DNA of 64,000 nt from Convolutriloba macropyga (taxonomy: Eukaryota). The translations under genes were made by a program, and so were the position numbers. Below, one piece after another: positions 2 through 31,756 of the stretch. The notes under the pieces were generated by a model. It saw only the letters and a list, made by a program, of their open reading frames with translations. It was not told where the DNA came from and ran no database searches. The stretch is taken from contig NC_134473.1 in the NCBI RefSeq assembly GCF_964194025.1, forward strand, positions 63,674,001 to 63,738,000, in the 5' to 3' direction. Every line of letters starts with the position of its first letter. Position 1 is the first letter of the stretch.

Positions 2-3000
2 AATGAGAATCACCAATCACATTTTGAACATATCAAAACTGTTATTGCAAACGCTACGGAAAATACTCATTTTAATCCAACACTGGAAACGCGCATCAAA
101 TGCGATGCATCTCGCCAAGGTTTAGGCGCGGCACTCGAACAATTAAACTGCGACGGGTGGAAAACAATAGCTTTCGCATCTCGTTTTCTTAATAGCAATG
201 AAGAACGTTATAGTGTAAATGAACTCGAATTACTTGGGGTGGTTTGGGCCATTGAAAATTTTAAATATTATTTATTTGGGAAAACCTTCACAGTTCTAAC
301 CGATCATAAAGCACTTCTTTCCGTTTTAAAAATACACCGCTCTAATAAATCTTACAACAGTAGATTAACACGATGGATTGACCGTTTGTTACCATTTGAT
401 TTTAATATTGAACATATTCCTGGTACCCGAATGGGCTTAGTTGACTATATTTCGCGACAACCAAATCAGAACGCTAAAAGTGTCAATCAATATGATGAGG
501 AATTTATGGTAGCAACAATTTCCCGTATTCGCGACGCGATTACATCTTTATTTTGTAACGCAAATAAAATTCCTTTCCAAAAGCGGCACATAACTAGTAA
601 TTATAAGCAACAAGTACATCCGACGCGAGTCCACTCTTGCAAACCTGCTAAAATTAGCGCGCATAATTCGAATGCCTCAATTAATTCATTCATTCCTCGA
701 GTACAAGTAAACAATTACAATTCTGAATTCATTTCTAACTTTAATTGCCGTGCAAATCAACTGCTCCAATCTGATACTACACCCGCAGCGCGAATCCCGT
801 CGCAAAACTCTAATTGCAATTTGATAGCTAGTTCCACACAACAAGTACTCCATATCAACATGTCAGCAAAAGAGGCATCACAAAGCAACCAATCAACTTC
901 ACCACAAACCCCAAGAGTGACATTTCGCACCCAATCCACTCCCATTTCATCTACTAGAGCCGGACCCAGCAACACCCAACCATCATCATCACCAGAGGAC
1001 TATGACATTGAACTTTCACGGGAAGAGGTATTCGAAAACAACTTAAACCAACTATTCACCAAATCCTTCCTAGCGGTACTAACAAGCAAAGACGCGGTGC
1101 TGAAAGAGATCCGCGATTGTGTGATGCAGGATGACGAAGCCCGCTGTAAAGAAGTGAGCGCATACATCCACTCCTTCTGGAAGGATCTACATGTAAAATC
1201 TGGGTGTCTGTGTGTTGACCAACGTGTGGCCATCCCGAATTCAATCAAGGAGGCGGTGCTTGAATCCATTCATATGACGCACCCGGGTAGTTGGGGGATG
1301 ATATCTCTCTCCCAATATGCATGGTGGCCCTACATGCATAGGGAAATTTTAGCAAAAACATCCGATTGCGCCCCGTGTACGGAAATTGGTAAGAATTTGA
1401 AACCTATTATACCAAAATCCAAATGGCATCCACACAAAGCTTGTCAAGAACCAAATGAAGAAATTCAAATTGATTTTGGGGGTCCGATAATTAATGATAA
1501 AGACAAAGATATTTACTTCTTAACATGTATTGACCGTTATTCAAAATATCCAACTGTTAGAATATTCGAAAATGCTAATGGGGCAAACGTAGTAAAATTT
1601 CTTCGTGATTATGCATATACTCATGGAATCCCGCGAACGATACGCTTAGATCAAGCAACTTGTCTTGTAAATAAACAAGTCACAAATTATTGTAACGAAA
1701 ATAATATTGACATTCTCGACGCTCCGGTTGGTGATCATAGAGCTATTGGATTGGTGGAGCGAATGATCCAAACAATTAAAAGACGTTTAGCCTGCATGAA
1801 AGCCGAAAATAAAGATACATTTTCTACAGCTAAAGCAATAAAACAAATAGTCTCTGATATACGATTAACTAAACAGAAAACAACAAAGATAACACCTTTT
1901 GAAGCTCATTTTGGTCGCCCTGCAAATACTCCCTTACGGAATATTAGCACACTTCCCTCAAGTAAAAACCTAACTTATGAAAAAATTGTTAATGACTATT
2001 TAGATGCTGAGACAGTTTCTCCGGAGGATTTGCTCGACGAAAATGGATGGATAAGTGCCAACAGAAGTGACACTGAGATAGAGAATAAGATGTGCCAGGC
2101 CTCCCTAGACGCAGGACAACGCTATCGAGAGTCAGACGTTAAAGAGTCCCGCTTTATAACGCACCCACAAATCACAGACCCTATCCCCAGGACCGAACAG
2201 TCCCTTAACGTCAAACTGGCTCGCAAATTACCGCAAAAGAAAAGAGCAAAACGACAACTGGCGGGCTTGTACGAAGTGCTGAAACCTGGCTCCTTCGTCA
2301 CCAAATCGTCACCAACAACGACGATAATTAACGAGCCCGGCAGAACTCCAGTGAAAGTCCGAGATAGCGACCTCGCAAAATTTGGGACTAAAGCAGAACG
2401 ATCTACCAACTTGTGGGTATACGCCCAAAGACGCCCTGCCCCGTACGAAAAAACTACAGAGTTCAAAATCGCGAAGCACAGTAATGATCTCAAGAAGCAA
2501 AAGAGGGGCGAAATCAAGATCAGACATCGCCAACGTGATACTACATCAGTAGTATCCTCTGTAAATTCAAATGTCTCGCGAGCATTAACAGTCCGCAAAC
2601 CAAATAAACCAGTTAAAAGACGCTTTACTGTTCCCACAGCTGATATACAAGAAGATGCCTCAACTCAAAACCAGCCTCTTATATCAATTGTACCGGCCCC
2701 ACCTACACCTACACCACAAGTACCTCCCGCACAAACACAGGACGACCAAACAAAAGGCCGCAAGCGCAATCGGCCTCAATTTTACGGCTTCACAGATGCT
2801 GACATCTCCCCTACAAGCTCTCTCGCCTCCACAAGTTCTACTCAGCCAAAGAAGCGCAAGACTAAAAAAGACAAGAAACAAACAACGAAGTCCGATTCAG
2901 TGGTAGCCCTCATACCAACGGCAGAACAATCTCGAATCCCGTCACCCCCCAGACCTGACTTACAATTGGGACATGTGTCACCACCGGATCCCAGAGTTCG

Positions 3001-3061
3001 ATATTTCGAATATGAGCAAGAACGAGAAATGTCGGTGTGGGATGCTGAAAATGAAATTTAA
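2..3061 (+). CDS. Ty3/Gypsy LTR retrotransposon pol, 3' part (RNase H, spacer, integrase, long C-terminal tail); 5' end outside the window
   Basis: Frame is open from base 2. RNase H motifs IKCDASRQGLGAALEQ, IAFASRFL, YSVNELELLGVVWA, TDHKAL, LTRW. Integrase HHCC finger (HMTHPG...CAPC) and DDE residues (QIDFGGP, IRLDQA, GLVERMIQTIK). RH-then-IN order is Gypsy-type. Confidence 0.95.
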   Translation, partial: NENHQSHFEHIKTVIANATENTHFNPTLETRIKCDASRQGLGAALEQLNCDGWKTIAFASRFLNSNEERYSVNELELLGVVWAIENFKYYLFGKTFTVLTDHKALLSVLKIHRSNKSYNSRLTRWIDRLLPFDFNIEHIPGTRMGLVDYISRQPNQNAKSVNQYDEEFMVATISRIRDAITSLFCNANKIPFQKRHITSNYKQQVHPTRVHSCKPAKISAHNSNASINSFIPRVQVNNYNSEFISNFNCRANQLLQSDTTPAARIPSQNSNCNLIASSTQQVLHINMSAKEASQSNQSTSPQTPRVTFRTQSTPISSTRAGPSNTQPSSSPEDYDIELSREEVFENNLNQLFTKSFLAVLTSKDAVLKEIRDCVMQDDEARCKEVSAYIHSFWKDLHVKSGCLCVDQRVAIPNSIKEAVLESIHMTHPGSWGMISLSQYAWWPYMHREILAKTSDCAPCTEIGKNLKPIIPKSKWHPHKACQEPNEEIQIDFGGPIINDKDKDIYFLTCIDRYSKYPTVRIFENANGANVVKFLRDYAYTHGIPRTIRLDQATCLVNKQVTNYCNENNIDILDAPVGDHRAIGLVERMIQTIKRRLACMKAENKDTFSTAKAIKQIVSDIRLTKQKTTKITPFEAHFGRPANTPLRNISTLPSSKNLTYEKIVNDYLDAETVSPEDLLDENGWISANRSDTEIENKMCQASLDAGQRYRESDVKESRFITHPQITDPIPRTEQSLNVKLARKLPQKKRAKRQLAGLYEVLKPGSFVTKSSPTTTIINEPGRTPVKVRDSDLAKFGTKAERSTNLWVYAQRRPAPYEKTTEFKIAKHSNDLKKQKRGEIKIRHRQRDTTSVVSSVNSNVSRALTVRKPNKPVKRRFTVPTADIQEDASTQNQPLISIVPAPPTPTPQVPPAQTQDDQTKGRKRNRPQFYGFTDADISPTSSLASTSSTQPKKRKTKKDKKQTTKSDSVVALIPTAEQSRIPSPPRPDLQLGHVSPPDPRVRYFEYEQEREMSVWDAENEI

Positions 3062-4130: not shown

Positions 4131-5104
4131 TAGTAGAATCACTTTTTTCGGAGAGAGCAATTGGGGACCGCACAGTAAATCGAAAGGCCAGTGGATTGAA
4201 AGTAATAGATTTTTAAAACTTTGGACTGTTGATAAAAAGTGAACAGAAACCGTTTAATATATTCCAATTGAAAACTTCACCCGTAACTAACTCTAAGACA
4301 AATTCAGTGCTGAGTCAGAGTCTAGCTAATTCAGTGAATCATTCCGAATTATCTTCTACTGAAAATTTTCTCGGAATTTTGTTCTGATTCAGAAGTTCAG
4401 AGATCACTTCACAGTTGGTTCTGAAATCCTTCTGAATCAGCACTAACACTGACAACTTCGCTGAAATTGTTCTGAATCCGTACTGATTGTCACTGAATCT
4501 TTGGTAAGGGAAGACTTTTTACTCATTCTTAAGCATGTGATTAGCTTATTTGACCATGTCTAATCTGCCCGCGGGACCCATTTTTAAATATCATCTTTGA
4601 ATTACCGCCCCACTTTTTTGCCTTCAATCTGCTGTCCTAGCCTCAGAGCAATTATTCAGAAGATAGAACTATTTCAAATTTTCAAGCTATCTTACCAACC
4701 AAGCACTTATATCGCACCAAAACCCCATTAATCAACAAAATTTAAAATTTGGAATCACATTTGATTAATATTATTATGAATTATCGTAATTCTAAGTCAA
4801 CATTACATCACAAATTCAACAACAAGTCTTGGAAAAGTTGCCTCAAAATAAGTTTATAGCTGAGCTGACGGTCGGTTCTGAAAGAAGCACAATATTGTAA
4901 TCAATTGATTTGCAGTTCCAGTGAGTAGGTATAACCATATTTGGTGTGAATGTATGGATCGTACATGGTTCTTTTTAGCAACATAGTCTAGATTGGAGTA
5001 GATGTCTGCTGTTGTAGCCGAAACTCCTGAAATGGCAACACTTGAAATAATAACTTGAAATAAAATCCCATAAAGTTGTAACAAAAGCGAACTTTCGAAA
5101 ACTC

Positions 5105-5220
5105 AAACCGACTAACGTCAGGCGAATTGCTCTCAAACGACCGGGGAGCGGTTGGCTTCGTCAGTAGCTAGGTACGGTTTAGTGAGGCTAGCTTTAGCTT
5201 AATTGAAAGAGCTATTTTGA
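5105..5220 (-). mobile_element. Family A non-autonomous Helentron/DINE-1-like element, hairpin end only
   Basis: CCGACTAACGTCAGG plus AATTGCTCTCAAACGA, near-identical to 11708-11810. Confidence 0.65.
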
Positions 5221-5560
5221 ATTTGAAAGTGAGAAAATTAAAAAAAGGAAAATATATCGCTGACAGACTTGGAGAGAAAAAACTACAGACCAAAACGATC
5301 CCAACCAAAAAAGTTATGATGTCCAAATCTATTTCTGTTTTGATAAAGGTCCACAAATAATTTCAATCAAGCAACACAGCATCATATCATTTTAGTTGGC
5401 GTTACCCCAATGCATTTCAGTTTGAGTTTAAAATCTCAAATCAATTCATCAAGGAATCAGAATTGTTCTCACGTAAGCCCTGTAAATAAATGAAATGAAT
5501 CGTTACAAAACTGTCCCATGTCTAAAATTACTTAGCACTGAGTACGTAGTCAAAAAGCAA

Positions 5561-5903
5561 ACATAAACCAAACAATGTCGGAAAAATTTCTCTCGAATGA
5601 CAGTGGTGGGGGCTTTTTTCATGTGTGCAAAACAGCAGACTAAGCTCGGGTTCGAACCCACACTTCTGAGTCCGCTTCCGTCACCTCGACGGAGGTATTA
5701 AACACTCGGCTATCAGGGCCTTGTCATCGTCTCGCTAACAATAGACTTGTTTAAACAATAGTCCGAAATCAAAAAGAAGTGCGTAAAAAAGTCACTTAAG
5801 ACGTCGAAGATTACTCTGAAGGAAAACGCAAAAACGGTCAAGCAAAAAATTTGCATTGAAAAGGCACGCTTTTTTATAATAATTGCTTCTCGAGGGCAAT
5901 TAA
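5561..5903 (-). mobile_element. Family A variant carrying a tRNA-like cassette
   Basis: Degenerate left end (ATGTCGGAAAAATTTCTCTCGAATGAC) and right end (CGGTCAAGCAAAAAATTTGCAT...AATTGCTTCTCGAGGGCAATTAA) match family A. Internal A-box TAGCCGAGTG and B-box GGTTCGAACCC on the minus strand. Confidence 0.6.
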
Positions 5904-6542
5904 AAAAAACAATGCTACAATAAATGACAAATATCGCGAGTTCCTGTATAATACTGGAAACGCATTGCAGACTCGTGCAACGAAAAATCAGAAATATGTG
6001 GCTTTATATTGTTGCGGTTCAGAGCAAAACTTATTGGTGGTGGGTCGCTTGGAGCAATTAATAACAAGCTATTGGTTAAGTTTAGTGTGTTCAGTAAAGT
6101 TGTTGCTGTCAAAGCTGACGCGGGTGAAGCTTGAGAGACAGCGGGTTTCGGGCAGACAGAAGGCAGCAAGGTTATGTGCCGAGGGGAAGGGGATCGTTTA
6201 GAGGACGGGTAGGTAACTTTGGAATCGTGGAGGGCGGCCACGGAAAAGAGGTGAAGGATGGGCTATGGAGAAGGAGCATAGCTTGCGGGTAGTTGAGGGT
6301 ATTTGTTTTGGTAGGGAGTGTCATGGAATCAAAACTTTTCAGAAGTTGCTAAGTACACTGAGTAAACGTTCTCTAAAAGTTAATGCCCAACTTTCATAAA
6401 AGAACCACTCAATCTTCAGTGATACAACTCAGCAAAAATGAAACTGAAGAATAACCGTATTTCTATTTGAGTCCAAGAAAAACCGCTAAGACAAATGATA
6501 GCCTCGCTGTGGTTTCGAGGCTTTTAGAATCAAAAATATTGA

Positions 6543-6905
6543 ACATAAACAACTAACGTCGAACCAATTGCTTTAAAAAAACCGGCAACCGGTTGGCTTC
6601 GGCACCATCAGTGGGTGGTGTGAGCGGAGTGCAGGGTGAGGGGCCAGGCGATGGGAGGATGGGGTAGGGTAGCGCAGGAGCTGAACGAGAGGGTGGTGCA
6701 AATTGCCAGCTTGGAGAAGGGTGGACGAAGGTTGACGGGGGGGGGGGGGTCAGAAGAATAAAAACCGCGGTCCACACCCTGATAATGTCTTCTCAAAACA
6801 GTTTCGGTAATGCGATAGACCTAAAAACTAGTAAGGTTCTAAGAGAGCTGCTCGGCCACTTAATGTCCTCCAGGGGCTACATGTTTATCCCGTTTTTGAG
6901 TAATT
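6543..6905 (-). mobile_element. Family A element, partial, G-rich interior
   Basis: ACTAACGTCGAACCAATTGCT...CGGTTGGCTTCG, then a G-rich tract and CTTAATG...GTTTATCCCGT shared with the 11705-12750 copy. Confidence 0.6.
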
Positions 6906-7419
6906 TGACTAATGGATGCAACTAACGGTATCTGCCTATTTGAAGCCCTAAACTAACAATAAATGTTTGAGGCAATTTCGAAGGATCTTTTTATGAGAGG
7001 GCATAAAATATTCGCAACTCAAGATGAAAGAAGAAAAGAATTGAGATTAAAATGTATAGGTTAAGTGACTGTGACGGCGTCATTGAGATTTTATTGTGCT
7101 AATAGAAAAGAAAATCGCAAAAATCTGGCTAAAATCGGAAAAACTGGCATTGCATTATTTGGCACTACAGAGTTTTGCATTTTTTGAGTTTGCATTTGTT
7201 TCCTTCTTTTGTGAGGTTGAGAGAGAGAGAGAGAGAGAGGGAGAACAAACTAAAGTAAATTGTGCATAAAATCAGTTTGACATAGCTTGTTCACGTTCTA
7301 CCTGCTAAACGTGAACTTAGCTAGAGAGATAACGCCTTGAGTAGCAAGAAAAAGAGATTGGGTTAATTGAGATAACCAGCTTCTTGATATTCAGACCAGT
7401 TTAGGTAATTAGCAGCACA

Positions 7420-7511
7420 CTAGGCTTGCAAGCAAGAGAAGATGGTTCCAATCCAGTAGAAGGCCGTTTTACTGCTTAGACCCCTTAACTCACAAGTCTG
7501 ATTTCCTCCTT
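7420..7511 (-). CDS. Terminal exon of a candidate Cys-rich glycoprotein gene
   Basis: AAAACAG acceptor at 7513-7512; phase-1 start; reads (E)GGNQTCELRGLSSKTAFYWIGTIFSCLQA-stop; phase matches exon 7993-8139. Confidence 0.6.
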
Positions 7512-7992
7512 CTGTTTTAAAGAATTAACAGTTCCTTAACAATCTAAAAATTTTCGGCTACTTGAGCTTCTTTTAAAAACTCAGTTTTCTTGTTTATCAC
7601 CTTTGGTTAAATTTTCACGGAGGCGTCTTACATCAATTTAAATTTTTGCAAATAATCAGGCTTTATAGCCAAGCAAAGTAAAAACCAAGCAAATCTCTTG
7701 GGCACGGTTTTTGATATTTTTTGAATTTCATAGCTCAAACAATAAAGAAAAGGGATAAAAATGGGTAAGGGTAATAATAAAAATTAGTGAACAGAAATTG
7801 ACGTGGAGTAATTTGCCTTGACTTTTTTAACCAACGGAATTCAGTACAACCAATTAGGTTATAAATAGTTCGATTAAATTTTTTTAAAGCATTATTTTCA
7901 TTTTTAAAAAAATTATTCCAACATCAGTTCAATTATATTCTCTGTTGTCAATTTGTATTAACACCTTATAAAAGCAAATATGATATAATTAC

Positions 7993-8139
7993 CCTTTGTA
8001 GACTGATTGAATTTGGCCAGAAACTGACGAGTACATTGAGAGTAGCATCGGCTGTACCCAGTTAAGTTTTCTGGAACAACATTGGCGGAGGCACAGCTCT
8101 CCATACACACTCCCCGTTGGAATTCATCATTTGTGTTGT
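7993..8139 (-). CDS. Internal exon of the candidate Cys-rich glycoprotein gene
   Basis: TTTTTAG acceptor and G|GTAATT donor; 147 nt, phase 1-1, open: NTNDEFQRGVCMESCASANVVPENLTGYSRCYSQCTRQFLAKFNQSTK; GC-richer than its flanks. Confidence 0.65.
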
Positions 8140-9392
8140 CTAAAAATTAAAATATAGTATAACTGACTGCACAAAAAAAGTTAAGCAAAATTCACCTGAA
8201 AAATAACATTAATTTACCAGAAACGTTAAGGCAATTTTGCCTAACTTGAACACTTATCTAAAATTCGACGTAAAAATAATTTTAAAGTAAAAGTGGCACT
8301 ACCTTAAACTTTACCTTAAAAAATCCTTCTTTTTACCTTAACAATAACTTACTTTTACCATAACTGTTATTGCTCTCGAACAAGAAAGAGTTTGGGTTTG
8401 TCTTAACTAAATTAGGCGTAGAGAAGCTGAGATGCTAGCTTCAGAGCCTGAGGATGAAAGCTAGTAGGGGGAGTAAAACTGTGGTTCTGGAGGCAGGTAA
8501 AAATGGGGGAGGGGCAAAAATTGTCCTAACAACTATGAATAACTGCCTCTTAGCAGCTTGAGTAAATCGTACAAATAGAAGTGGGTATGGGGTGTGCTCA
8601 TTGACATAATGTCTTCAAGCTTTACAAAAATATGCCGCTTCTTTCAACAAAAAATCAAATCATTTTAGTGAACGAAAGAACGTTCCAAAAGAAAACAGTC
8701 GAGCAAAAATTTATCATATGTAAAAGTATAACCAGTAAAAGCTCAGAAACGATTCCAATATTCGTTCAACATATTCGCTCAGTGTCGATCAACACAGATT
8801 CTGAACTCACCTTACCTATATATTACAAAAATCAGAAGTATCGACAAAAAGAACGAACTATTTTCAAAAACCAAATGTTAATTGCCAACTAAAACTATAG
8901 AACGCAGACAAAGTTTTCCGGAAATGAGACAAAATTTATGCATGGGTTGGGTGCAGCCGGGGAATGGTGTAGGTAGGGTTGGTGGTTGGGGTGGAGGGGG
9001 GGGGGGGGGTTAGTCGTTTAGGTATGGAAGAGGGAAAAGACTTCCCTTAATTACCTTTCGTCTTTAAATAATATGATGCTTGATGTTAGCTCTTCAAACA
9101 ATTCGAATAGTCATTATTCGAAAAAAGAAATGGAAAAGAGAAGTGAGGAAATCAAATCATGATCAGGAAAAATCTTTAACTTCAAGTCTGTCATACATAA
9201 TGATAAGTTATTGTTCCTTATGTTCATTTCTGCAGTAAATTTTAGTAAAATGTTTTTCTTTTCATATAAGGTATTTCACCACACTTTTCCCGAATGTCAT
9301 ATTTTTTTCTTCTATTTCGCTTAGCGGTTTCACATAAATGTCTAGGCTTAATTCTCCCGCACGGTGAATTCATATCTTGATCATGTTACAAT

Positions 9393-11515
9393 ATTTGTTC
9401 CGACCCTCTTGAGGGGGGAGGAACTATATACTCAAATGGGTTTTTTTTGTTCCGTGAATTTTGGCCGACCGATATGTTCATCGTAGAGAAATGTGCTTGG
9501 TATCATTAAAAAGCTCGTCCCGCGTAGAATTCGAAATTAAAAAGATTTTTTTAATTTCGTTTTTTTTCCGAGGAGGTATCGAGGTTTAAAGTTTCATGTG
9601 AACACTGGATATTTGGTTCACTTTTGTTCACTTTTACCGTAATTTTCGTTCGAATTAACGTTTTTTCTACGAAAAATTTAATTCAAAACTAAATTTCACA
9701 CCAAAAAGTAAATCAATTTTAGGTTTTTAATAGACGAAAGGAGATAATAAAGACTAGTTTCAGTCTTAGAGGGAAGTTTAATATATAAAAAAAAAATTCG
9801 AATTAGGTTTGGGAGCTCTTTTTTTTTTAGAAAATTTTGCAATCTTTTCGTTTTTTCAAGTCACCTAGAGACTACTAGACACTTTTAATATCGAAGTTCC
9901 GTTAATGACAAACCTGTTTCACGATCAAATGAAGCCCAATGAACAAAAAATTTGTTTCGAAGGGATCGCTCATGTTTTTTTTGGACTCGTATCTCAAATT
10001 TGGTATTTTCAAATGAAATTTTGATTTATTTTTTGACGTTTTACTAAAGTTTTATAATCCTATGGCATAAACTTGTTGACTAAAAGTGCAATAGATTTGC
10101 TAATGAGCATTAAGTGAACCTATCTAGTGCTGTGAGTGGACAGCTAATGGCTGTTAAGACTTTGAAAATAAATTTTCGAAAGTTCTTTAAAATTAGTAAA
10201 TCATAAACTTATTTTTGTGAACTGTAAGTTCGTCTCAGTAAAAACAGGATTGAACTCCTTCTTACCACTGCAACATAAGTTAATCTCATTGGCGGTTTGA
10301 TCAAATAACTATTGGTTATACGTCTTCAATGCCACAAGATTTCAAATTTTTTAAAAAATTTTTTGGACATTTCATTTTATTGGTTCATTTTGAAATCTTA
10401 TCACGTCATCCTAATATTGATGGCTACATCTTCCTTCAGTGAAGACGTCAAAAGGATCATAGATAAAATTTTCTGAGAAAAAAATATGGTTTAAATGGCT
10501 TCAACACTTTCTTCTCCCATTTTTCTAAAGAAATTTTGGTTTTTGCCTGTATTTGTTGTTTTTTTTCATAGTCATCAGACATATTGTGATGTCTTTTTGA
10601 TTACCTAGGCATCATAAACATCCTTTTATTCACATCGTGGCATAGCTGAGCGTATTCATTGAATTCCTATGAAAGCTTTTGAGTTTAATGGCTGTTAAGA
10701 CTTTAAAAATATTTTTTTTTTATTTTTTTTTGAACATAAATCAATCTTAAGCTTATTTTCGTGGATTTTAAGTCAGTCTCGGTAATGACAGAACCGTTTT
10801 TTTTATATCAGCAACAATTTATCTAGATAGCGGTTTTGTCTTCTAACTATTGGTTTTTTTGACTTCGGTGCACGAGATTTCATAATTTTTATAATTTTTG
10901 GATTTTTTTTAGTAATTTTGGTTCCTTTTGAAATCGTATTACATTATCCTAATATTGATAGCTCCCATTGGCTTAGTGAAGACGTTCAATGGATCGTTGA
11001 AAAAGTTTTCAGAGAAAAAAGCTTATGGTTTAAATAGCTTCGACACTTCCTTCTCTCAATTTTCTACCGAATTTTTGGATTTTGCCTGTTTTTGTAGTTG
11101 TTTTCATAGTTAATGACTTGTTGTAATGTCTTATTGATAAATTTTGAATGACAAACATCCTAGTCGTCACATAATTTAGGCATAATTTAGCGTATTAAAT
11201 GCCTTCCGTTGAAAGCTGTAGAATTTTTTGACTTTGATACTATGGGTTTTCTCAAAAATTTCGTAGTTTTGATGTATTTTTCTGTGCCATACGACTTATT
11301 GTGATGAGTTTTTGATGTCACATGAATGAAACCTATGATTGCTATTTCATCGAGGCAGAATTTAGTGTGTTTAATTAACTTAAAATGTAGCATTTTTTTA
11401 AAATTCAAACATCTATTTTTGTTATCTCTTCATTTGGTTGACAATTAAGTCAAAAATGTAGATGAGCTCGGGTCGGAACATCATGTGCGAACACACATTA
11501 ACGAGCCGCCTTGTT
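9393..11515 (+). mobile_element. Family B non-autonomous Helentron/DINE-1-like element, about 2.1 kb
   Basis: GTTCCGACCC at the 5' end, its inverse GGGTCGGAAC at 11470-11479, then hairpin ATGTGCGAACACACAT and GAGCCGCCTTGTT. Ends are homologous to 17512-20117 and 40487-43084; interior has degenerate tandem units. Confidence 0.7.
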
Positions 11516-11704
11516 CAATTTTATTCTCAAACTTAAAGTGTAATTGTAGTTGAGAATTCGCTCCGCGAGATACAAATGTAATATCTCCCAAATGCAATTT
11601 CAAAGCAAAGTTTGTGTTGCTTATTTGGTTACCGCACTCGCCGATCAAAATCAGTGCACTTAAATAGTACAATTACATAACAGTTACATAAAAAGGTACA
11701 ATTA

Positions 11705-12750
11705 CATAACCGACTACCGTCGGCTGAATTGCTCTCAAACGACCAGCGAGCGTTTGGCTTCGTAAGTAGCTAGGCACGGTTTAGTGAGACTAGCTTTAGC
11801 TTAATTGAAGGGGCGTGAGGTGAGCGTAGCGGGGGGGGGGGGGGGGGGGGGAAGGTGAGAGGTGGGTCTTTGGCTGCACAGGGCCCTTACGGCCTGAACA
11901 ATGTGCAGTGGTGGGGATTGGGTTGGGGGAATTGGGGTTGGGGGGATGAAGTGAGGGGAGGGGGGGGGGGATTATCACTCAAAGTGATGTTAATGCTCAC
12001 CGCCCTTCACACCAAAAATGTAATTAGGTCTCCAAAACAGATTCTGTGACGTGTCCGGACAAAACAGTCCCAGACAAAACAGTCCCAGACAAAACAGTCC
12101 CAAATTGCAAAATATTCCCAGACAAAACAGTCCCAGACAAAATAGTCCCAAGAAACCAGACAAAACAGTCCCAGACGAAATAGTCCCAAATAAAATGTAC
12201 CTAATGCCATTATACCCAATGTACTTTGAAATGTTCGTTCAATAATCCGACAACAAATTAGCAGTCGCTATTACCCGTATGTTTTAACATACTTAATGGC
12301 CATGGCCATGCCTCAGCGGCCCGTGGGACTTGATATGAAACTATCACAACCGAACATGGGATTAAATTATCCGCTTGTTAAATCATATGTGTGAGAGCTA
12401 TAATAATGGCCTTGGGACTATTTTGTCTGGGACTGTTTTGTCTGGTTTCTTGGGACTATTTTGTCTGGGACTGTTTTGTCTGGGAATATTTTGCTATTTG
12501 GGACTGTTTTGTCCGGGACTGTTTTGTCTGGGACTGTTTTGTCTGTTCACCTTCTGTGAACCGCATACTTGGAGATTAGTGATCCGAAAGGCTCTAAGGG
12601 AACTTAATGCCCGCTGGGCGTTACCTGTTTATCCCGTCTTTGAGGACGAAAAGTGAAATTGGTCAGATAAAAAATTGTTTAAGCAAAAAATAGCATAAAA
12701 AGATCAACAGGAATAATATAATGCCACACATTTAGTTTCAGAGCAATTAA
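11705..12750 (-). mobile_element. Family A element, both ends present, interrupted by a foldback insertion
   Basis: Hairpin CCGAC-TACC-GTCGG (11710-11723), subterminal repeat AATTGCTCTCAAACGA (11727-11742), inverse GTTTCAGAGCAATT (12735-12748). Confidence 0.7.
12050..12551. mobile_element. Foldback/MITE-like element with modular TIRs of about 140 bp
   Basis: Arms built of the 15-bp unit CAGACAAAACAGTCC (about 12055-12190) and their reverse complement (about 12412-12545); flanked by direct repeat TTCTGTGA (12042-12049 and 12552-12559). Confidence 0.85.
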
Positions 12751-13914
12751 TTACAACATAACTAGCCAGATGAGGCTTCAATTTTGTGATCCAAGTTATG
12801 TGCTTTCATTAACTCAATTTATTTTCAGTTCCTAATACATTGGTTCTCAATTTCACGGGTAAATTTAAGGCCTGCAGCCATTAGGGGGGGGGGGGGGGGG
12901 AGTGACGAGTTTTCAAGCAGGCGTGCATTAATTTAATTAAACAAACCATTGTGGATTAAAACTTTTTCTCGGCCTGCATTATTCGAAATACTATCTTTAT
13001 TCGTAGTTATCTATTTCGCTTGGCTCGTTTGGCCGCCACACTTGTGCCATGGTTATGCATAGGTGGCCCTTGGGACTTCATACAGAATTTCCGCAACCGA
13101 ATTAGATCAGTATAACCAAAAAATATTGGATTGGCACCCCAAAATTTGGATTATCACGCATATTACTTTAATGCTCTCATCCTTGCGTGAATGTTTTGAG
13201 CTGATGCAGAAGAGAAATATCACTGATGTTGAGAGGTAATGGTTAACTGTGAGATGCTGTTTGAGGATATTATTCAACCATGGTTAGGCCCATCCTAACA
13301 ATGATGAACCCTGTCTAGAACTTAGATCGTCTCCCGTTTGTTGCCACATTAACGCCAGTCGAATTTAGATCGTCTCCTGATCAATGCCAGTCGTCCCGTT
13401 TGTAATTTTTATCACCAGGCAAACAATTTTAAAACGGGAACTTACCAAAAAGACAGTTTTAACATTTACTTAAGTTTCACAAAACTTTATCATTTTTTCC
13501 GATTTAATCATCCATCGGTTTCGGAAAACTTTGCATATCGAAAAAATATTGCAAGAATTTTTCCTCAAAATTTGCACGCCTGTATCTCTACATTTGAGCG
13601 ATATGTGAGCGTTGTTAGTACCTGACTCATATGTCACACCTTGTGCTTCAAGGAGACCAGCTCGCAACCAAGAGTCTTTAAGGACACCAGTCGCGACCAA
13701 AAGTCTTTAAGGAGACTAGCGCCCGAAATAATATGAGGAAAAGTTTTCCAATGGTCTTTTGCAATGCATTTATGCACTGCTAGAGGTCTCTCGCACCATT
13801 GCTGCATGTTATGCGAACTAGTATGATCCATTTTTATACATTTTAACTTAGAATAATAATTGTAAAGATTAGATTGTTATTAGTTTAACAATGATCAGCA
13901 AAGGCAATTTATAA

Positions 13915-14010
13915 ACATAACCGACTAAACGTCGAAATAATTGCTCTCGAACGACTAGTGGGAGCTCTAATCAATTGCAGCTTGCTTCAGTCGGGGGGGG
14001 GGGGGGTGGA
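13915..14010 (-). mobile_element. Family A fragment
   Basis: ACATAACCGACTAAACGTCGAAATAATTGCTCTCGAACGAC followed by a G run. Confidence 0.6.
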
Positions 14011-15417
14011 GCCTAAATGTGACTAAGAAGTTCAATGAGTAGATTTGGCTTGTCAAACTTTTACTGGGGAGCTTATCAGTTGATTCTTTGGCACCATTTT
14101 TTTTAAAATTAACGCAATTTGTAGTATCGCTTTTTATTATATAACTTTCATCTTCCTAATACATGATTAAAATTAGACGAGAAGTTTTCATCATATCTTT
14201 TTCAAACCACCACTATTAAACCACATTAATTCATAGATAATTAATGGCAATTTCATTGTGGATTGCTTCAAACTTGGAGGAAGGCTGCTCTTTGAAAGTG
14301 TAGGTTTGCTCTGCTATGGACTCTACTGGAAGTCACCGAGGACCCTTTATCAAGAACAATGTAGTTGTTCGATATGTCGAGCCAGAAATTTGAAGTGGTT
14401 TCGGCATAGTCACATAACCTTGCTTAAAACACGGAACGAGCACTTTTTGAAAAGACGAAAATTAAATGGAAGTCAACTCCTGGCAAAGTATATAGAAACT
14501 TCTTGCACGTGAGTGTTTTAGCAATATAAAGTTACTGGAGCACAGTTGGTTCACTAGCCAGATTAAAAGTGAACAACTAAAATCAATTTTTGTTGGCTCG
14601 GTTTACAAGTGAGCTTTAGTTTGAAACTGTGCCTGCCTTAGTTTTTCCTGCTGAAAATTGAGATGGAAGAAGCACTTTTCATTGGTAACAAACAAGAAGT
14701 AAAAGAGAATTTTGAATTGAAAATTTGAAACTAGTCAGACAAAAATTTTAGACAAAAAGAACATACACGACTACAACTTAGATAATAACTTTTTTAATTG
14801 CCTAAAAACAATGTTTAAAATCTTCATTGAGACAAGAGATTGGATGTCAAAGCTGTTTTTGCGTCAGGTTTTTGTTTTGCGTCAGTTTTTTTTTCAATTA
14901 AGAAATAGAAATTTTTTTACGGTCAATATACTTGTACGGCGTGCGATAAGCAATTTTGTAAATTTTGAAAAGCAATTCTGTGAATTTGATAGGCAGTTTT
15001 GGAGTGGTTTTTTTATCAGCATACCTCGAAGGCAAATTTAAATGAGCAGTATTTAGAGGGCATTCGGGAGTGATTTTTCAGTTATGAAATTGCCAATTAT
15101 TGGAACCAAAACGATCATGATGTCGGTTTAAAGACTTAAACCGACATCGCTTTGGCCGAAAAAGGTTTGGCTTAAAAATTACTGGATCTATTCTGCTCGA
15201 CATATAGCTTTTACGGATCCAAATCCAACCCCCCCCCCCCCCCAGACGCACCTAATATTTTTCATTTTAAACTGCTATATAACATATATAACAACACATA
15301 ATTTGATAGTTTGTAATTAAGGTTCAGAAAAAAACACGGGGCGGGTATTAGACAGAATGGAGCCCAATTGGCTTACATTTATGATTGTGAAGTAATATGT
15401 TTATATAGGAAACTGAC

Positions 15418-15610
15418 TAATGGGGTAAGAAGTAGAGTTGATTAGGAACATTGTTTTCCTGTAGACACAGTCTTTCAATGTAACGGAGGTCACATTGATA
15501 GTTGAGTTGAAGAAGGGCAGTGTCGCACAAGTGTGATCAACTTGATACTCCCACGAAGACGAATCCACACAACACAACAACAACAATACAAATTGATTAT
15601 CTGTACCTTG
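15418..15610 (-). CDS. Upstream exon of the candidate Cys-rich glycoprotein gene (start exon not found)
   Basis: C-rich tract plus TTTCAG acceptor (15612-15611); GTCAGT donor at 15417; ends in phase 1. Reads QGTDNQFVLLLLCCVDSSSWEYQVDHTCATLPFFNSTINVTSVTLKDCVYRKTMFLINSTSYPI. Confidence 0.5.
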
Positions 15611-17511
15611 CTGAAACTTGGGGGAGGGGGGGTGGAGGGGTAACAACTGGTAACAACGGGATCTACTCTGCACCAATACCCCCAGCCTAATGCGCCTATA
15701 GCTTTACGGGCCCAGGCGTAAAAGTCATATAACAAAATAAAAATTTTAAGTGGGGGTCATAAAAAACACTGGGGGACTAAATTCCTGAAAAGATCCTGCC
15801 TCCCATTGGAATGAGTCATATCAATGGAATGACACATACATGACACATCAATACTTTCTATCTTTTTTCTTCCATTACAAGCATCTACTTACAAATGAAG
15901 TGCTATGTAAGTAAGTTTTTATCGCAACATAAAAACCAAACAATTATTTGCAAAAATTTGCAAACTTTCCATCAATTTAGCTGACAAAGCCTTCTGATTA
16001 AAAATTGAATTCACCTAAACATGTTTGTTAACTATTAATAAGAACATAAGCGTATATGTACTGCAAAATATTCCTAACGTCAGACATCTAAGGAATCACT
16101 GGAAATTTTATAATCCATTTCAACACGATTTTGATTTCTTCCCACCAAATTGTTACTAGTATTTTGCTACAAACATCTTAGCCCATTAATTTGTGAACCA
16201 AATTTTATTATTTGACTTTTAAAAAAGTCTTTTGAGGAAAAAGGGTGAACACCATATCACAAAAATAAGGTATTAGAGGCTCTTAATTTCCAAAAGTAGA
16301 CATTTGCAATTGTTGTGAGCCAGCTGTGAGAGTTAATCGGCGAATAAGAAATAGAGTTGAAAATAATTGACTTCAATAGAGATGAACTTTTGGAACTGGA
16401 ATGTTTTATAATCAGAACGCAATTTTCAAAAATAAAAATAAATTTATTATAGTATTTTGACTGCTCAAATAAGATCCAACAAACTCGCGAACTCAAAATG
16501 AGGCTGCCTAAAGCGTAGAAATTTAAATAACTAAGTTTCAAATTCCTGTAATGAAAATAAATCAAGAACAGTTAAATTTTAGTAGAGCGAAAAACAGTTT
16601 AAGAATTACGAACAGTTTAAGAATTCTCAATGTTTTCAGATTTAATGCAATGTGAGACACAATTAATTATTTGCAAAAAATAATTTAAAAAATTTAAAAA
16701 CTTTGAATGACCATAGCTGTTAAAGCTTTCTGATGACAATTGAATTCACCGAACCGTTTTTGTTAAAAGTTTTTTATCAAAGGATTGGGTGACCTTTATA
16801 TACGCTGAAAAATAAGTACGGACTGACATAAAAAGGCAATTAAGCAAATCTTTTATTGGTTAAAAGTATAGAGTTTTTCTATGCTCAATTTAAAAACACA
16901 ACTTTTCCCATTCCTAAATCTCGGGTGGATACATTATGGCCTTAACTTTACCTGTTGAGACGCAGAGTTGCCTGCGCATTCGATGCAGAGGTATACCCCA
17001 AAATTTCCGCCTTAGTAAAATTGGCTCGAAAATTAGTTACATACAATGAACGAAATTAGGTGACATCCTTTGTATCTTACTTTTCGCAAAAGGGGTTCCG
17101 CCAATTTTGCAAAATAAAAGAACATTCGGTGCGAATTTAGGAACTTCTAAAATTTCAGTTACTCCTTTATTTTATTCTATCAGGAAAATATAGCTTATGA
17201 CTTAATCAGGGTGCAATATTTCAAAAATATCACCGCTTGTCAAGTCTAAAGTTTTCTATTTAACTCTAAAATTTGAGTTCAGCTTTTTGGCACAGAACTT
17301 CTAGGATTAAGATGGTTGAGCGACCATTATCTATTGAAAAATAAAAGAAGGAAACTTATAAGATTTATAGGTCCGGTCTATGATACTACTCCCAATTGGT
17401 CTCGAAAATAATTGTGATTAATTTTTCTTTTAACTGGTAGTACAATGGATTTTTTAGCAAATATCAAAAAACATGTTCTTGGACGAGATTTTCAAAACAA
17501 AAGTTTGGATT

Positions 17512-20117
17512 GGTTATTCCTTCGACCACTCTTTAGGGGGAGGGGGGGGAGGAACTATATACTCAATTGGATTTTTTTGGTCCGACAATTTTGGCCGATC
17601 GATATATTCATCGCAGATAGTTGTGAGTGGTATCATCAAAAAGTCCATATTGCGTAGAATATGGATTTAAAAAGATTTTTTAAACTTAGTTTTCTAGAGA
17701 GATCTATCCAGGTTTAAATTTTTGTGTATGATGAGATTGATTTGCACATTTTCCGGAAGTTTTGTCTCAAATTTATCATTTTTGTTCAGACATGATAAAA
17801 ATGTTAACAAAAGTGTTAATGGTTTGATTTTGAAAGACAAAAAAGTATTGTTGCGCATTTGATTTACTTTTTTGGCAAAAATTTCGGCAATATATTTCAA
17901 AATTCAGCCTTTTTCATCAAAAAAAGGACGAAATGAGCTTTTTTATTTCACTCTGATTAAGTTTTCTGAAAGTATACACCCAAAAACTACTAATACAGTC
18001 TTTGTAAACTCAAAAGTGGGTTATTCTTACTTTGGTTTTTATTGAGAGTGCTCTGTAATTAAAATTTTGCCGTTTATTTGCTAACTTTACTCGTTGATTA
18101 TCAAAAACGCAGCTTTTATTTTCGATTTTTTAACTTACAAATTATCTTTATCTATAACATTAAAAAAAATATGTGTTCCTAATGGATGAAAAGCATTAGC
18201 AGGGATATTTTTGGACCAATCATTACTGTTACAATACAAAAATATTTCGGATTGTAATCAGTCGGTCTTTCTAAAGTTTGATCTTTTTTATATTAAAAAG
18301 AGAACAGAACATTTCAAATCAAAGCTCACGGGTGATAAGTGCAATTAGCGTCCTAAGCAACTACAAATGACTATATCTAGTTTGTCACTTGAAAGCTTAT
18401 TTTGGTTTTGACTTCTAAAATTATTTGTTTTTAAACGGCTTTTGAAATTTATCACTGTTTTTCTCTTAATTTGGTCAAAATTTTAGCTAATTGTCGGCAA
18501 AAAAGAGAGTGTCTTCTTTCTATTGAAGTCAAAATTAATATTTGTAGCGGTTTTACGCGTTAAGTTATGATTTACTGGCCTTGACACCACCACATTTCAC
18601 AAACTTTTTTGACTTTTAGGCATTTGCCCATTTTTCAAGCTTTATCTCGTTTTTTCACAATGTGATATTGTTGGCAGTTCAAATAACACATTACTGGCAT
18701 TCCAAATAGGGCACCATTAAACAAATCAAAATCTTTAAAGGTACAGAATATGGTTGGAACGGCTGCGACACCACTTTCTCGAAGAAATTAATTGAGTTTT
18801 TTACTTTGTCTATAACTGCCGTTTTCTCTTTGTCTTTTTGTCGTGCGAAATTTCCTGGAGAATGACAGGTCTCACTGGCTTTTTAAGGAAGATTAGAAGA
18901 GCCTATTTTCTATTTTGAGTAGATGGCTGATGGCTTTGATGACTTTGAAAACGCTTGTTTAAAAAAAGCAAAAAAAGCACTTCACAACTTCGCTTTTTGG
19001 TCTTTTTTATGTGTTTTTGTTACCTGGTCTCGTTGAATAAAGACAAGATATGACATTATTGGCGTCAAGAGAAAGCGTTAGTTTACAAAATATAAAGATT
19101 TTTTCAAAGAATTCGTAATGACAGCAACGGCTTCGACACGGTTTTTCGAAAAAAAAAGTAAATTAGTTTTTGATTTTTGTCTATATTTGACTTTATTCTT
19201 GTAAACCTAAGACATTATCTGAATAAATACAGATCGCATGGGCTTCCGTTGGACAAATAAACGAATCCACCTATTTATTTTTATTCTGCAACTAATGGCT
19301 TTCATGACTTTGGAAGTAATTGTTTTCGAAAAACACGAAAATATTTCTTAAGTTCACCACTTTTTCGCAATTTTGTCAAATTTTTTACCTAATCTCATTA
19401 ACGATCCGTCACATACCATATTATTGGCTTTCTAAGAACATATGTTGAGGGGCAGAAAAAGTATTTACGCTTGGACAGCGTTTTCTCACAAGTTTTATTT
19501 GAATTTTTGTTTGTTGTCTCTATTTGTTGTTTTTTTTTGTAACGGCAAGAACAATTGCATAAAGACAGGTCCTAATTACCTCCCATATAGGCATTAGGGA
19601 TATTAAAACGTTTTGATAATTTCAGTTGATTTCTAATGGTTTTCCATTTTTTGAAATTAATTGTTCTTAAAAAATATAAGCGAATTTTTTAACTTTGCTG
19701 TTTTTTTTCCTTTTAGTCTAATTGTAACAGAGCCTTATTATGGACTGGTTTCATATTTTTCAAGTAAAATATAAATTAATTTGCTCAGTTTCAGTTTCAT
19801 CTGACGCTATCTTGACTTTGTGATTAAGTTTTTTTTTAAAATGGACATAAAGTTTTGGATAAAATTAATGTTTGTTCTTGTTGTTTGATTTTGTTGTACT
19901 TCTGGCCTCGCTTTCTTAAAAACGGCAGATCTTATCATTCTAATGCGGCAATTTTTATTCCACTGAAGTATTTGCGTTGGAGGCGATATTTTTGCTCACA
20001 TACAATTTTTTGGAAAATTATTTGGTTTTCTGGGGTTTTCTATCTGTTCTCATATGGATCTGCGGGGTCGGAACTTCGGAACTTTATGTGCGAACGCACA
20101 TTACCGAGCCTCCTTGT
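17512..20117 (+). mobile_element. Family B element, about 2.6 kb
   Basis: GGGAGGAACTATATACTCAA head; 3' GGGGTCGGAAC, ATGTGCGAACGCACAT hairpin and GAGCCTCCTTGT; colinear with 40487-43084. Confidence 0.75.
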
Positions 20118-30570: not shown

Positions 30571-30574
30571 ACTT

Positions 30575-31426
30575 CCTTTGACGAATTAACCCCTGACTAA
30601 AATTGCTATAGAAGAGTGGGCTGCAACGGGCTGCAATGGGAGGACTTTTGAGGAATTACCCCCCCTGACTAAAATTGGCCAAATTGCCATGTAAGAGTGG
30701 GCTGCAATGGGCCGCAACGGGAGGACTTTTGAGGAATTACCCCCCAGACTAAAGCTCACAGGTAAGAGTGGGCTGCAATGGGAGGACTTTTGAGGAACTA
30801 ACCCCTGACTAAAATTGCCATGTAAGTGTGGGCTGCAATGGGAGGACTGTCGAGGAATTACCTCCCCTGGCTAAAATAGCCATGTAAAAGTGGGCTGCAA
30901 TGGGAGGATTTTTGGGGAATTACCTTCCCTGACAGAACAGAAATTGACATGTAAGAGGGCTGAAATGGGCAGCAATGGGAGGATTTTTGAGGAATTACCC
31001 CCTGACTGAAAATTCCATATAAGGGAGAGCTGCAATGGGAGGACTGTCGAGGATTTACCCCCAGACTAAAGCTCACAGGTAAGAGTGGGCTGCAATGGGA
31101 GGATTTTTGAGGAATTACCCCCCCCCCCCTGACTCAAATTTCTATGTAAGAGAGAGCTGCAATGGGAGGATTGTCGAGGAATTACCTCCCCTGGCTAAAA
31201 TAGCCATGTAAAAGTGGGCTGCAATGGGAGGATTTTTGGGGAATTACCTTCCCTGACAGAACAGAAATTGCCATGTAAGAGGGCTGAAATGGACAGCAAT
31301 GGGAGGACTTTTGAGGAATTACCCCCTGACTGAAAATTCCATATAAGGGAGAGCTGCAATGGGAGGAGTGTCGAGGAATTACCTCCTCTGGCTAAAATAG
31401 CCATGTAAGAGTTGGCTGCAATGGGA
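30575..31426. repeat. Satellite 2: monomer of about 60 bp with a 5-mer (about 324-bp) higher-order repeat
   Basis: TTTGAGGAATTACCCCCTGACTAAAATTGCCATGTAAGAGTGGGCTGCAATGGGAGGACT; matching variant runs begin at 30849 and 31173. Confidence 0.92.
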
Positions 31427-31429
31427 CCA

Positions 31430-31756
31430 AAAATGTAAAATGGTGTCAGGGTGAGGGGGTAATTTATTCAGAGGCGGAAAAAGATGTAAGAATTCGGCTG
31501 CCAAAGGGAGGGGGGTAAAATGGTGTAAGAGCAAGGGGTTATTTGTTCAGCGGGGTTAAAAAGAGGTAAGAGCTGCGCTGCCAAGGGGGTAAAAAAGTGT
31601 AAGGGTGAGGGGGTAACTTGTTCAGAGGGGGTAAATTGAAGTAAAAGTTGGGCTGCCAAGGGGGTTAAAGTGGTGTATGAGTGGGGGGATAATTTGTTAA
31701 GAGGGGTTAAAATGATGTAAGAGTTGAGCTGCCAAAGGGGATAAAATGGTGTAAGC
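31430..31756. repeat. Satellite 3: degenerate units of about 75 bp
   Basis: About four copies of GGGGTAATTTGTTCAGAGGGG..AAAAGATGTAAGAGTTGGGCTGCCAAGGGGG.AAAATGGTGTAAG. Confidence 0.8.

What the first reader, a model, noticed from the sequence alone, without database searches (positions are those of the whole stretch)
7420..15610. Hidden spliced gene for a small Cys-rich, heavily N-glycosylated protein
Seen: three minus-strand exons with canonical AG/GT ends and matching phases join to ...FVLLLLCCVDSSSWEYQVDHTCATLPFFNSTINVTSVTLKDCVYRKTMFLINSTSYPINNTNDEFQRGVCMESCASANVVPENLTGYSRCYSQCTRQFLAKFNQSTKEGGNQTCELRGLSSKTAFYWIGTIFSCLQA-stop. It has a signal-like hydrophobic stretch, eight downstream Cys including two CxxxC pairs, and seven N-x-S/T sequons (NST, NVT, NST, NNT, NLT, NQS, NQT) spread over all three exons, one created only by a splice junction. 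I do not recognise the family and did not find the ATG exon. Inference: a lineage-specific secreted or surface protein with transposon-filled introns.
Basis: partly seen in the sequence, partly recalled or inferred. Interest (0 to 1): 0.7.

Follow-up and report, generated by a model that had tools for sequence, protein, structure and literature searches.

The report
Annotated orphan Cys-rich acoel gene

Summary
The three minus-strand pieces, their AG/GT borders, matching phases, peptide, 8 cysteines and 7 sequons are all there. The genome is Convolutriloba macropyga.

A search of 1.84 billion proteins with exon B alone found one true hit: RefSeq XP_075248132.1, "uncharacterized protein LOC142341126". 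Its CDS maps to 15451-15418 | 8139-7993 | 5026-4857.
- The gene is therefore not hidden.
- RefSeq starts at an ATG inside exon A, downstream of the signal-like stretch.
- RefSeq ends in a different, TM-like last exon.

There are no homologues, paralogues or Pfam families, so this is a single-copy orphan. Exon B folds as a confident twin-CX3C helical hairpin.

Synonymous codon use, sequon density, the open frame upstream of the RefSeq ATG and a very strong acceptor at 15611 favour a 5'-truncated annotation of a small secretory glycoprotein. None of this is proof. Only DNA runs were served, so no junction read was seen.

The scan noted another annotated acoel Cys-rich orphan elsewhere in this genome (s1-204426). 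It is not this gene.

The parts
15418..15610 (-). The 53 codons 15610-15452 carry the signal-like hydrophobic core, 2 further Cys and 2 sequons, and lie upstream of the annotated start.
   Evidence: The 53 upstream codons are open by chance with P about 0.04-0.05. The synonymous-codon score of exon A is +2.26 bits, reached by 6-12% of chance frames.
15611..15640 (-). Candidate 3' splice site of an unannotated upstream intron: a C/T-rich tract ending in tttcag directly before exon A.
   Evidence: The pyrimidine fraction is 0.80, the 98th percentile of all AG sites in the window. Its use in RNA has not been shown.
7993..8139 (-). Exon B, identical to RefSeq CDS exon 2. It holds the twin CX3C motif (C-x3-C, 15 residues, C-x3-C) and the NLT and NQS sequons. 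The splice junction creates an N-N-T sequon.
   Evidence: (100% identity to residues 13-60 of P0001). AlphaFold2 gives a helix-loop-helix with mean pLDDT 84.7. Single copy.
8140..15417 (-). It contains a 2.1-kb high-copy element (9395-11515) and a foldback inverted repeat (12051-12550).
   Evidence: and 14 (word depth 1e4-1e5 over 9274-11000).
7420..7511 (-). It is not in the RefSeq CDS and lies inside RefSeq intron 2. At best it is an alternative last exon.
   Evidence: Against it: the acceptor pyrimidine fraction is 0.50, the 47th percentile. For it: synonymous-codon score +2.9, reached by 3.6% of chance frames; AATAAA at 7095, 325 nt after the stop.
4854..5026 (-). RefSeq last coding exon (56 full codons plus TAA at 4856-4854), with a TM-like stretch near the C-terminus.
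   Evidence: 100% identity to P0001 residues 61-117; acceptor ccatttcag. Single copy. The best 19-aa Kyte-Doolittle window scores 1.47. Synonymous-codon score is only +0.19.

Best explanation
This is a real, single-copy, spliced orphan gene of Convolutriloba macropyga, already annotated as LOC142341126.

Shown:
- Intron 1 (15417-8140) and the donor after 7993 are those of the RefSeq model.
- The encoded core is a twin-CX3C helix-loop-helix with unusually dense N-x-S/T sequons.
- It has no relatives anywhere.

Inferred:
- The annotated CDS is 5'-truncated. Translation really starts in a short, unannotated ATG exon spliced onto the strong acceptor at 15611.
- The hydrophobic FVLLLLCCV stretch then acts as the core of a signal peptide, and the protein enters the secretory pathway.
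- There its six ectodomain cysteines would form three disulfides, two of them stapling the hairpin, and the sequons would be glycosylated.
- The protein stays on the membrane through the TM-like segment of the RefSeq last exon (5026-4857).
At most it is a minor alternative GPI-like end.
For: Gene and junctions:
- P0001 = XP_075248132.1 is 100% identical over exon B.
- It maps to the window with canonical GT-AG introns.
- Its initial CDS piece is only 34 nt, before a 7.3-kb intron. That structure points to transcript-based rather than ab initio modelling (inference).

Coding:
- The synonymous-codon log-odds of A, B and C together is +8.0 bits. This is reached by 0.8% of chance triples, or 1.5% when GC-matched, and lies within the range of real coding segments.
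- A twin CX3C occurs 0-1 times per roughly 65,000 aa of chance frames.
- AlphaFold2 predicts the hairpin at pLDDT 84.7. Its loop (18-24) sits where C11-C35 and C15-C31 would pair.

Secretory reading:
- There are 4 sequons in the 60 residues that RefSeq itself calls coding. That density is seen in 0 of 6964 windows of intracellular coding segments and in 0.4% of chance frames.
- The frame is open for 84 codons upstream of the RefSeq ATG (P about 0.014-0.018).
- Only one ATG, immediately followed by TGA, lies between 15727 and 15452. Three ATGs lie in 15760-15452, against 5.4 expected.
- The acceptor at 15611 is in the 98th percentile.
- The 9-residue hydrophobic core scores KD 3.5, while the 19-residue window scores only 0.9. 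That is signal-like rather than TM-like.

Last exon:
- The RefSeq acceptor is at the 85th percentile and that of exon C at the 47th.
- RefSeq's end gives an even number (6) of ectodomain Cys.
Against: - No RNA read was seen. The only runs served were genomic: one contig spans 7254-9415 without a gap.
- No initiator ATG exon was found. There are 92 possible phase-0 ATG mini-exons upstream and none stands out.
- RefSeq, which had RNA-seq available, did not extend the CDS.
- The full-codon score, which includes amino-acid composition, is intermediate at -2.3 bits. It lies below all 42 kinase/Ras test chunks.
- The protein language-model recognition values are low, 1209 and 2211.
- The donor of exon A (gtcagt) has C at +3.
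- The other individual (X4) differs in exon B at 2 sites, one synonymous and one Tyr-to-His inside the second CX3C. That density matches the flanking intron, so there is no sign of constraint, on very small numbers.
Confidence: 0.45

Rival explanations
1. The RefSeq CDS is right as it stands. The product is a 117-residue protein without a signal peptide, starting at ATG 15451. It has a helical hairpin and one TM-like segment 9 residues from the C-terminus, which is a tail-anchored topology. The reader's upstream 53 codons are 5'UTR that happens to be open, the sequons are never used, and exon C is intronic.
For: - This is the only public model.
- The ATG at 15451 is the first in-frame ATG, with A at -3.
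- The region upstream is almost free of ATGs, as 5'UTRs are.
- This stretch is open in two frames at once, so its stop potential is low.
- The TM-like stretch lies close to the C-terminus.
Against: - An 84-codon open frame upstream has P about 0.014-0.018.
- A 98th-percentile acceptor sits exactly where the signal-like stretch begins.
- The sequon density is unlike intracellular proteins of this genome.
- The TM-like window scores only 1.47, and its exon has near-neutral codon use at +0.19.
Confidence: 0.25
2. The locus is transcribed and spliced but not meaningfully translated. It would be a young or de novo transcript in transposon-rich DNA whose ORF, cysteines and sequons are chance features picked up by the annotation pipeline and by the reader.
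For: - No homologue or paralogue anywhere and no Pfam family.
- Chance chains with the same composition are common under exhaustive search.
- The full-codon score is intermediate.
- Recognition values are low.
- Exon B varies between individuals as much as the introns do.
Against:
- The twin CX3C is in register with a confident predicted hairpin.
- Sequons fall at the loop and the ends of the helices rather than in their cores.
Confidence: 0.2
3. One reading: exon B is spliced to exon C (7511-7420), giving a roughly 145-residue secreted protein with a GPI-like tail. RefSeq's last exon would then be a minor or wrong choice.
For: - Exon C has the best synonymous-codon score of all pieces (+2.9).
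- It continues the Cys and sequon pattern (N-Q-T-C).
- It ends in a hydrophobic tail directly before the stop.
- It is followed by AATAAA 325 nt downstream, whereas the nearest signal after RefSeq's stop is ATTAAA about 600 nt away.
Against: - It is not in RefSeq.
- Its acceptor is no better than a random AG.
- It gives an odd number (7) of mature cysteines.
- The tail hydrophobicity is weak for a GPI signal.
Confidence: 0.1

Closest known systems
RefSeq LOC142341126 / XP_075248132.1, uncharacterized protein of Convolutriloba macropyga
   Same: Same locus, same strand, same intron 1 (15417-8140), same exon B and same donor after 7993.
   Different: It ends in exon 5026-4857 instead of 7511-7423.
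Disulfide-stapled helical hairpins with C-x3-C...C-x3-C: plant alpha-hairpinins and scorpion CS-alpha/alpha kappa-toxins (own knowledge)
   Same: Two CX3C motifs on the two arms of a predicted helix-loop-helix. These are small Cys-rich proteins, in most cases secreted.
   Different: There is no sequence similarity. Here the hairpin is embedded in a longer glycosylated chain with a membrane-anchor-like end. Disulfides and secretion are unproven.
Small Tim proteins of the mitochondrial intermembrane space (Pfam PF02953, twin CX3C)
   Same: A twin CX3C with a 15-residue spacer, within the 11-16 range typical of small Tims (own knowledge), and a helical hairpin.
   Different: No Pfam match even at E = 10. 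Sequon-rich, with hydrophobic ends. Not a member.
Small GPI-anchored or type-I Cys-rich surface glycoproteins such as Ly6/uPAR (CD59-like)
   Different: No match to any Pfam family. The predicted fold is helical, not three-finger. The anchor type is unresolved.
Earlier scan finding s1-204426: acoel-specific secreted Cys-rich two-domain gene in the same genome
   Different: Another chromosome piece. Six-frame searches of the genome with exons A, B and D found only this locus, so the two are not detectably related.

Membership tests
RefSeq gene LOC142341126 (same gene) | Encodes the exon-B peptide and joins it to ...YPI through intron 15417-8140 | tested here: met
   P0001 is 100% identical over exon B, and its residues 1-12 map to 15451-15416.
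RefSeq starts at 15451 and ends in 5026-4857.
Small Tim / zf-Tim10_DDP (PF02953) | Match to the family profile | tested here: not met
   hmmscan of exon B and of P0001 against Pfam found no such family, even at E up to 10.
Small Tim / zf-Tim10_DDP (PF02953) | Twin CX3C separated by 11-16 residues | tested here: met
   The spacer in exon B is 15 residues. The motif alone does not define membership.
Disulfide-stapled helical hairpin (alpha-hairpinin / CS-alpha/alpha type fold) | Helix-loop-helix with one CX3C on each helix, in register | tested here: met
   AlphaFold2 single-sequence model: helices at 2-17 and 25-46, loop at 18-24, pLDDT 84.7. The cysteines are at 11, 15, 31 and 35.
Disulfide-stapled helical hairpin (alpha-hairpinin / CS-alpha/alpha type fold) | Two disulfides (C1-C4, C2-C3) in an oxidising compartment | not testable with these tools
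   Needs protein chemistry.
Secretory protein with a cleavable signal peptide | Initiator Met followed by a short n-region and a 7-15 residue hydrophobic core | tested here: inconclusive
   The hydrophobic core is present (KD 3.5 over 9 residues). There is no in-frame ATG in the open frame, and 92 untestable upstream ATG mini-exons exist. No signal-peptide predictor was available, and the joined model was not submitted anywhere.
N-glycoprotein | Sequon density above background in a lumenal or extracellular segment | tested here: met
   There are 7 sequons in about 143 aa, against 0.0078 per aa in chance frames and 0.0044 per aa in kinase/Ras segments. Sequon occupancy itself is not testable here.
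GPI-anchored protein | C-terminal small-residue omega site, short spacer and hydrophobic tail, in an exon that is really used | tested here: inconclusive
   The tail of exon C averages KD about 1.3 over 14 residues. The exon is not in RefSeq and has an average acceptor.
Tail-anchored membrane protein (rival reading of the RefSeq CDS) | No signal peptide and a single TM within about 30 residues of the C-terminus | tested here: inconclusive
   The RefSeq protein has a 19-residue window of KD 1.47 that ends 10 residues before the C-terminus; the full 20-residue TM-like segment ends 8-9 residues before it. This is just under the usual TM threshold.

The most novel reading that the evidence does not exclude
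The public model is truncated. The real product would be a lineage-specific, signal-peptide-bearing, heavily N-glycosylated surface protein built around a disulfide-stapled helical hairpin. Its two alternative last exons (7511-7420, GPI-like; 5026-4854, TM-like) would switch the kind of membrane anchor. Such a young surface glycoprotein in a photosymbiotic acoel could act at the host-alga or host-microbe interface.
Probability: 0.1. Interest if true: 0.45.

Novelty: already known. Interest (0 to 1): 0.2.

Why it matters
- For the scan: a reader without tools recovered a true 7.3-kb intron and a coding exon from raw sequence. That is a useful calibration.
- For biology: the gain is small. The locus is already in RefSeq as an uncharacterized orphan.
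- What could matter is the indication that the annotated start is wrong. If so, a small secretory glycoprotein with a simple twin-CX3C hairpin is being listed as a signal-less 117-residue protein.
- Such errors hide lineage-specific secreted proteins. These are the class most often tied to symbiosis and defence in poorly studied animals such as acoels.

Tried and rejected
- RNA evidence. The look-up of sequencing runs with exon A returned four runs of one study. Laid on 5200-11000, they proved to be genomic, with contigs running through exon and intron alike.
- Pfam on every piece and on P0001: nothing.
- PDB sequence search with P0001: nothing.
- ESM Atlas with exons A and B: no usable hit.
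- Word-based search of 5.8 billion proteins with the exon-A frame and with P0001: only P0001 itself.
- Hits P0002-P0006 of the representative search are sums of weak matches to tandem-repeat proteins, not relatives.
- The look-up of encoding contigs for P0001: no record served.
- Whether missing transcript-derived proteins mean no expression. The METTL14 control shows that the collection holds only NCBI/ENA genome-derived proteins for this species, so the absence says nothing.
- Training a coding model on secreted proteins.
- A first chain-enumeration script timed out. A second was not length-normalised and was discarded.
- Exons were searched one by one by reference. The only spliced protein used was the database's own P0001.
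Full report
**Observation.**
On the minus strand the three pieces are exactly as described.
- A is 15610-15418. It follows tttcag and is followed by gtcagt.
- B is 8139-7993. It follows tttttag and is followed by gtaatt.
- C is 7511-7423, with TAG at 7422-7420, and follows aaaacag.

The phases fit (1+2 bases at each joint). The frame of exon A is open for 100 codons (15703-15404) without any ATG before 15451.

**Organism.**
The window is C6:63674001-63738000 of a 1,175,981,408-base assembly. The protein found below is named for Convolutriloba macropyga. The genome note for that acoel gives 1,175.98 Mb and mentions a whole-animal directional poly(A) RNA-seq run (PMC13650328). An earlier scan note had already called this genome an acoel (s1-229337).

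**Is it more than chance?**
Taken alone, the composition is not convincing.
- This AT-rich window has 38 open frames of 100 aa or more, nearly all non-coding.
- I enumerated every AG/GT-bounded three-piece chain of at most 150 aa. Chains with at least 6 sequons and 10 Cys turn up in 30 of 60 Markov-null strands.
- With a hydrophobic start and tail as well, they turn up in 2 of 60 null strands, and in 0 of 60 when a twin CX3C is also required.
- A smaller first run had 1 of 6 null strands pass. The real window holds one more such chain, near 47200/40400/38140.
- Across a 1.2-Gb genome, that rate would yield hundreds of chance look-alikes.

**The decisive result.**
HMMER with exon B alone against 1.84 billion representatives gave one genuine hit: P0001, 117 aa, 100% identical over all 48 residues. 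The other five hits are summed weak matches to tandem-repeat proteins.

P0001 is XP_075248132.1, [quoted passage not shown]. It sits on a 75.67-Mb contig and is the sole member of its cluster. tblastn places it at 15451-15418, 8139-7993 and 5026-4857, followed by TAA. Both introns are GT..AG.

It follows that:
- a chance chain would not hit both ends of a 7.3-kb intron;
- the gene is not hidden;
- RefSeq starts at an ATG inside exon A, so only the last 11 codons of A count as coding;
- RefSeq joins exon B to a different last exon, and exon C lies within RefSeq intron 2.

From my knowledge of NCBI's pipeline, not checked here, purely ab initio Gnomon models without protein hits are not released. 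A 34-nt initial CDS piece before a 7.3-kb intron also looks transcript-derived. The model is therefore probably RNA-supported, but I could not see the evidence.

**RNA.**
Laid on 5200-11000, they are genomic: single contigs run from 7254 to 9415 through exons and introns. No junction was tested. The fourth run is another individual. In exon B it differs at 8096 (AGC to AGT, synonymous) and at 8044 (TAC to CAC, Tyr to His inside the second CX3C). That density is like the flanking intron, and the numbers are too small to read.

**Orphan status.**
- Six-frame searches of the whole genome with exons A, B and the RefSeq last exon find only this locus.
- The exons are single copy at the DNA level.
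- There is no Pfam family, no PDB relative and no Atlas neighbour.
- No other protein shares words with it among 5.8 billion clusters.
- For this species the collection holds only genome-derived proteins, as the METTL14 control shows. Missing transcript-derived entries therefore say nothing about expression.

**Coding potential.**
I trained on 49 uninterrupted kinase and Ras segments of this genome (9855 codons) against 1130 chance frames of the window.
- The synonymous-codon log-odds are +2.3 (A), +2.9 (B) and +2.9 (C) bits, +8.0 together. Only 0.8% of chance triples reach this (1.5% when GC-matched), and it is typical of real coding segments. The likelihood ratio is about 10.
- The score that also includes amino-acid composition is intermediate at -2.3.
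- Five lectin and CAP segments of this genome also score far below kinases, so that shortfall is expected for extracellular proteins.
- RefSeq's last exon is near neutral at +0.19.

**Structure.**
AlphaFold2 on exon B alone gives helix 2-17, loop 18-24 and helix 25-46, with mean pLDDT 84.7. Cys 11/15 and 31/35 are in register across that loop, as in disulfide-stapled helical hairpins. The sequons fall at the N-terminal end, in the loop and at the C-terminal end of helix 2. A twin CX3C occurred 0 times in 66,023 aa of chance frames and once in 61,499 aa of a reversed-sequence null.

**Where does the protein start?**
- The 53 codons between the acceptor and the RefSeq ATG are open with P about 0.04-0.05. 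The full 84 upstream codons are open with P about 0.014-0.018.
- Exon A follows an AG with a pyrimidine fraction of 0.80, the 98th percentile of all AGs in the window.
- The hydrophobic core is signal-like: 9 residues at KD 3.5, while the 19-residue window scores only 0.9.
- The 60 residues that RefSeq itself calls coding hold 4 sequons. That is never seen in 6964 windows of intracellular coding segments and occurs in 0.4% of chance frames.

Against the extension:
- No ATG exon can be identified. There are 92 phase-0 candidates in 6.4 kb. The unique 1.9 kb just upstream holds, for example, 15848-15840 with donor GTATGT and 17125-17081 with donor GTAAGA, but none is testable here.
- RefSeq did not extend the CDS.
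- The stretch is open in two frames at once, so its stop potential is low.
- It is also nearly free of ATGs, as a 5'UTR would be.

**Which last exon?**
- For RefSeq's exon: it is in the public model. Its acceptor is at the 85th percentile, against the 47th for exon C. It gives six ectodomain cysteines, an even number. It ends in a TM-like stretch (KD 1.47) followed by eight polar residues.
- For exon C: it has better codon use. It continues the N-Q-T-C pattern. It has a hydrophobic tail at the stop. AATAAA lies 325 nt downstream, whereas the nearest signal after RefSeq's stop is ATTAAA about 600 nt away.
- I rate exon C as the less likely of the two, and possibly an alternative end.

**Introns.**
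"Transposon-filled" is partly right. Intron 1 holds a 2.1-kb non-coding element (9395-11515) with many copies at 92-96% identity (word depth 1e4-1e5). It also holds a foldback repeat with 139-nt arms. No transposase or reverse transcriptase lies in it.

**Verdict.**
- Best reading (0.45): a real orphan gene whose annotated CDS is 5'-truncated. It would encode a small secretory, membrane-anchored glycoprotein with a disulfide-stapled helical hairpin.

**Method note.**
Exons were searched singly by reference. The only spliced sequence used was the database's own P0001.

**Earlier scan findings.**
The scan noted a comparable, already annotated Cys-rich orphan elsewhere in this genome (s1-204426). 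It is a different gene.

Noticed in passing
window 9395-11515: A 2.1-kb non-coding element with sharp ends. More than 40 scored copies are 92-96% identical, there are about 19,000 first-look candidates, and word depth in genomic runs is 1e4-1e5. It looks like a very young, very abundant non-autonomous transposon, and it contains an internal 538-nt duplication.
   Followed up: partly
window 12051-12189 and 12412-12550: A foldback inverted repeat. The 139-nt arms are built of 15-nt tandem units, are 96% complementary and are separated by a 222-nt spacer.
   Followed up: no
window 28231-31755: A 3.5-kb block of satellites with 56-nt, 62-nt and 76-nt units. It has strong GC skew (-0.38) and raised GC content.
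   Followed up: no
window 4300-4523: A roughly 200-nt high-copy element (about 80% identity, at least 1990 candidates) that lies 330 nt downstream of the RefSeq stop codon. It may sit in the 3'UTR of the gene.
   Followed up: no
window 2-3058 (+), 23109-24011 (-), 54520-55584 (-), 17544-20117: The gene is flanked by retroelement remains: a Ty3/gypsy pol fragment (RNase H, integrase), a BEL/Pao peptidase fragment, a reverse-transcriptase fragment next to ORC5, and an older 2.6-kb repeat (72-78% identity).
   Followed up: partly
window 55923-56435 and 60178-60726 (-): Two exons of an ORC5 homologue (Pfam ORC5_C), separated by a 3.7-kb intron.
   Followed up: no
genome-wide, loci L005-L034: Most protein-kinase domains of this genome lie in single uninterrupted open frames, some over 1000 codons long. 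Many genes are therefore intron-poor, like the intron-less METTL14 at 49414-51084.
   Followed up: no
window about 47200 / 40400 / 38140 (-): A second three-piece chain meets the same composition criteria (sequons, Cys, hydrophobic ends). It was not examined and may be chance.
   Followed up: no
window 7994-8001 onward (-), read-through of the exon-B donor: If the donor after 7993 is not used, the frame runs on for 13 more codons and ends in a short hydrophobic tail before TAA. An intron-retaining transcript would therefore still give a complete small ORF.
   Followed up: no
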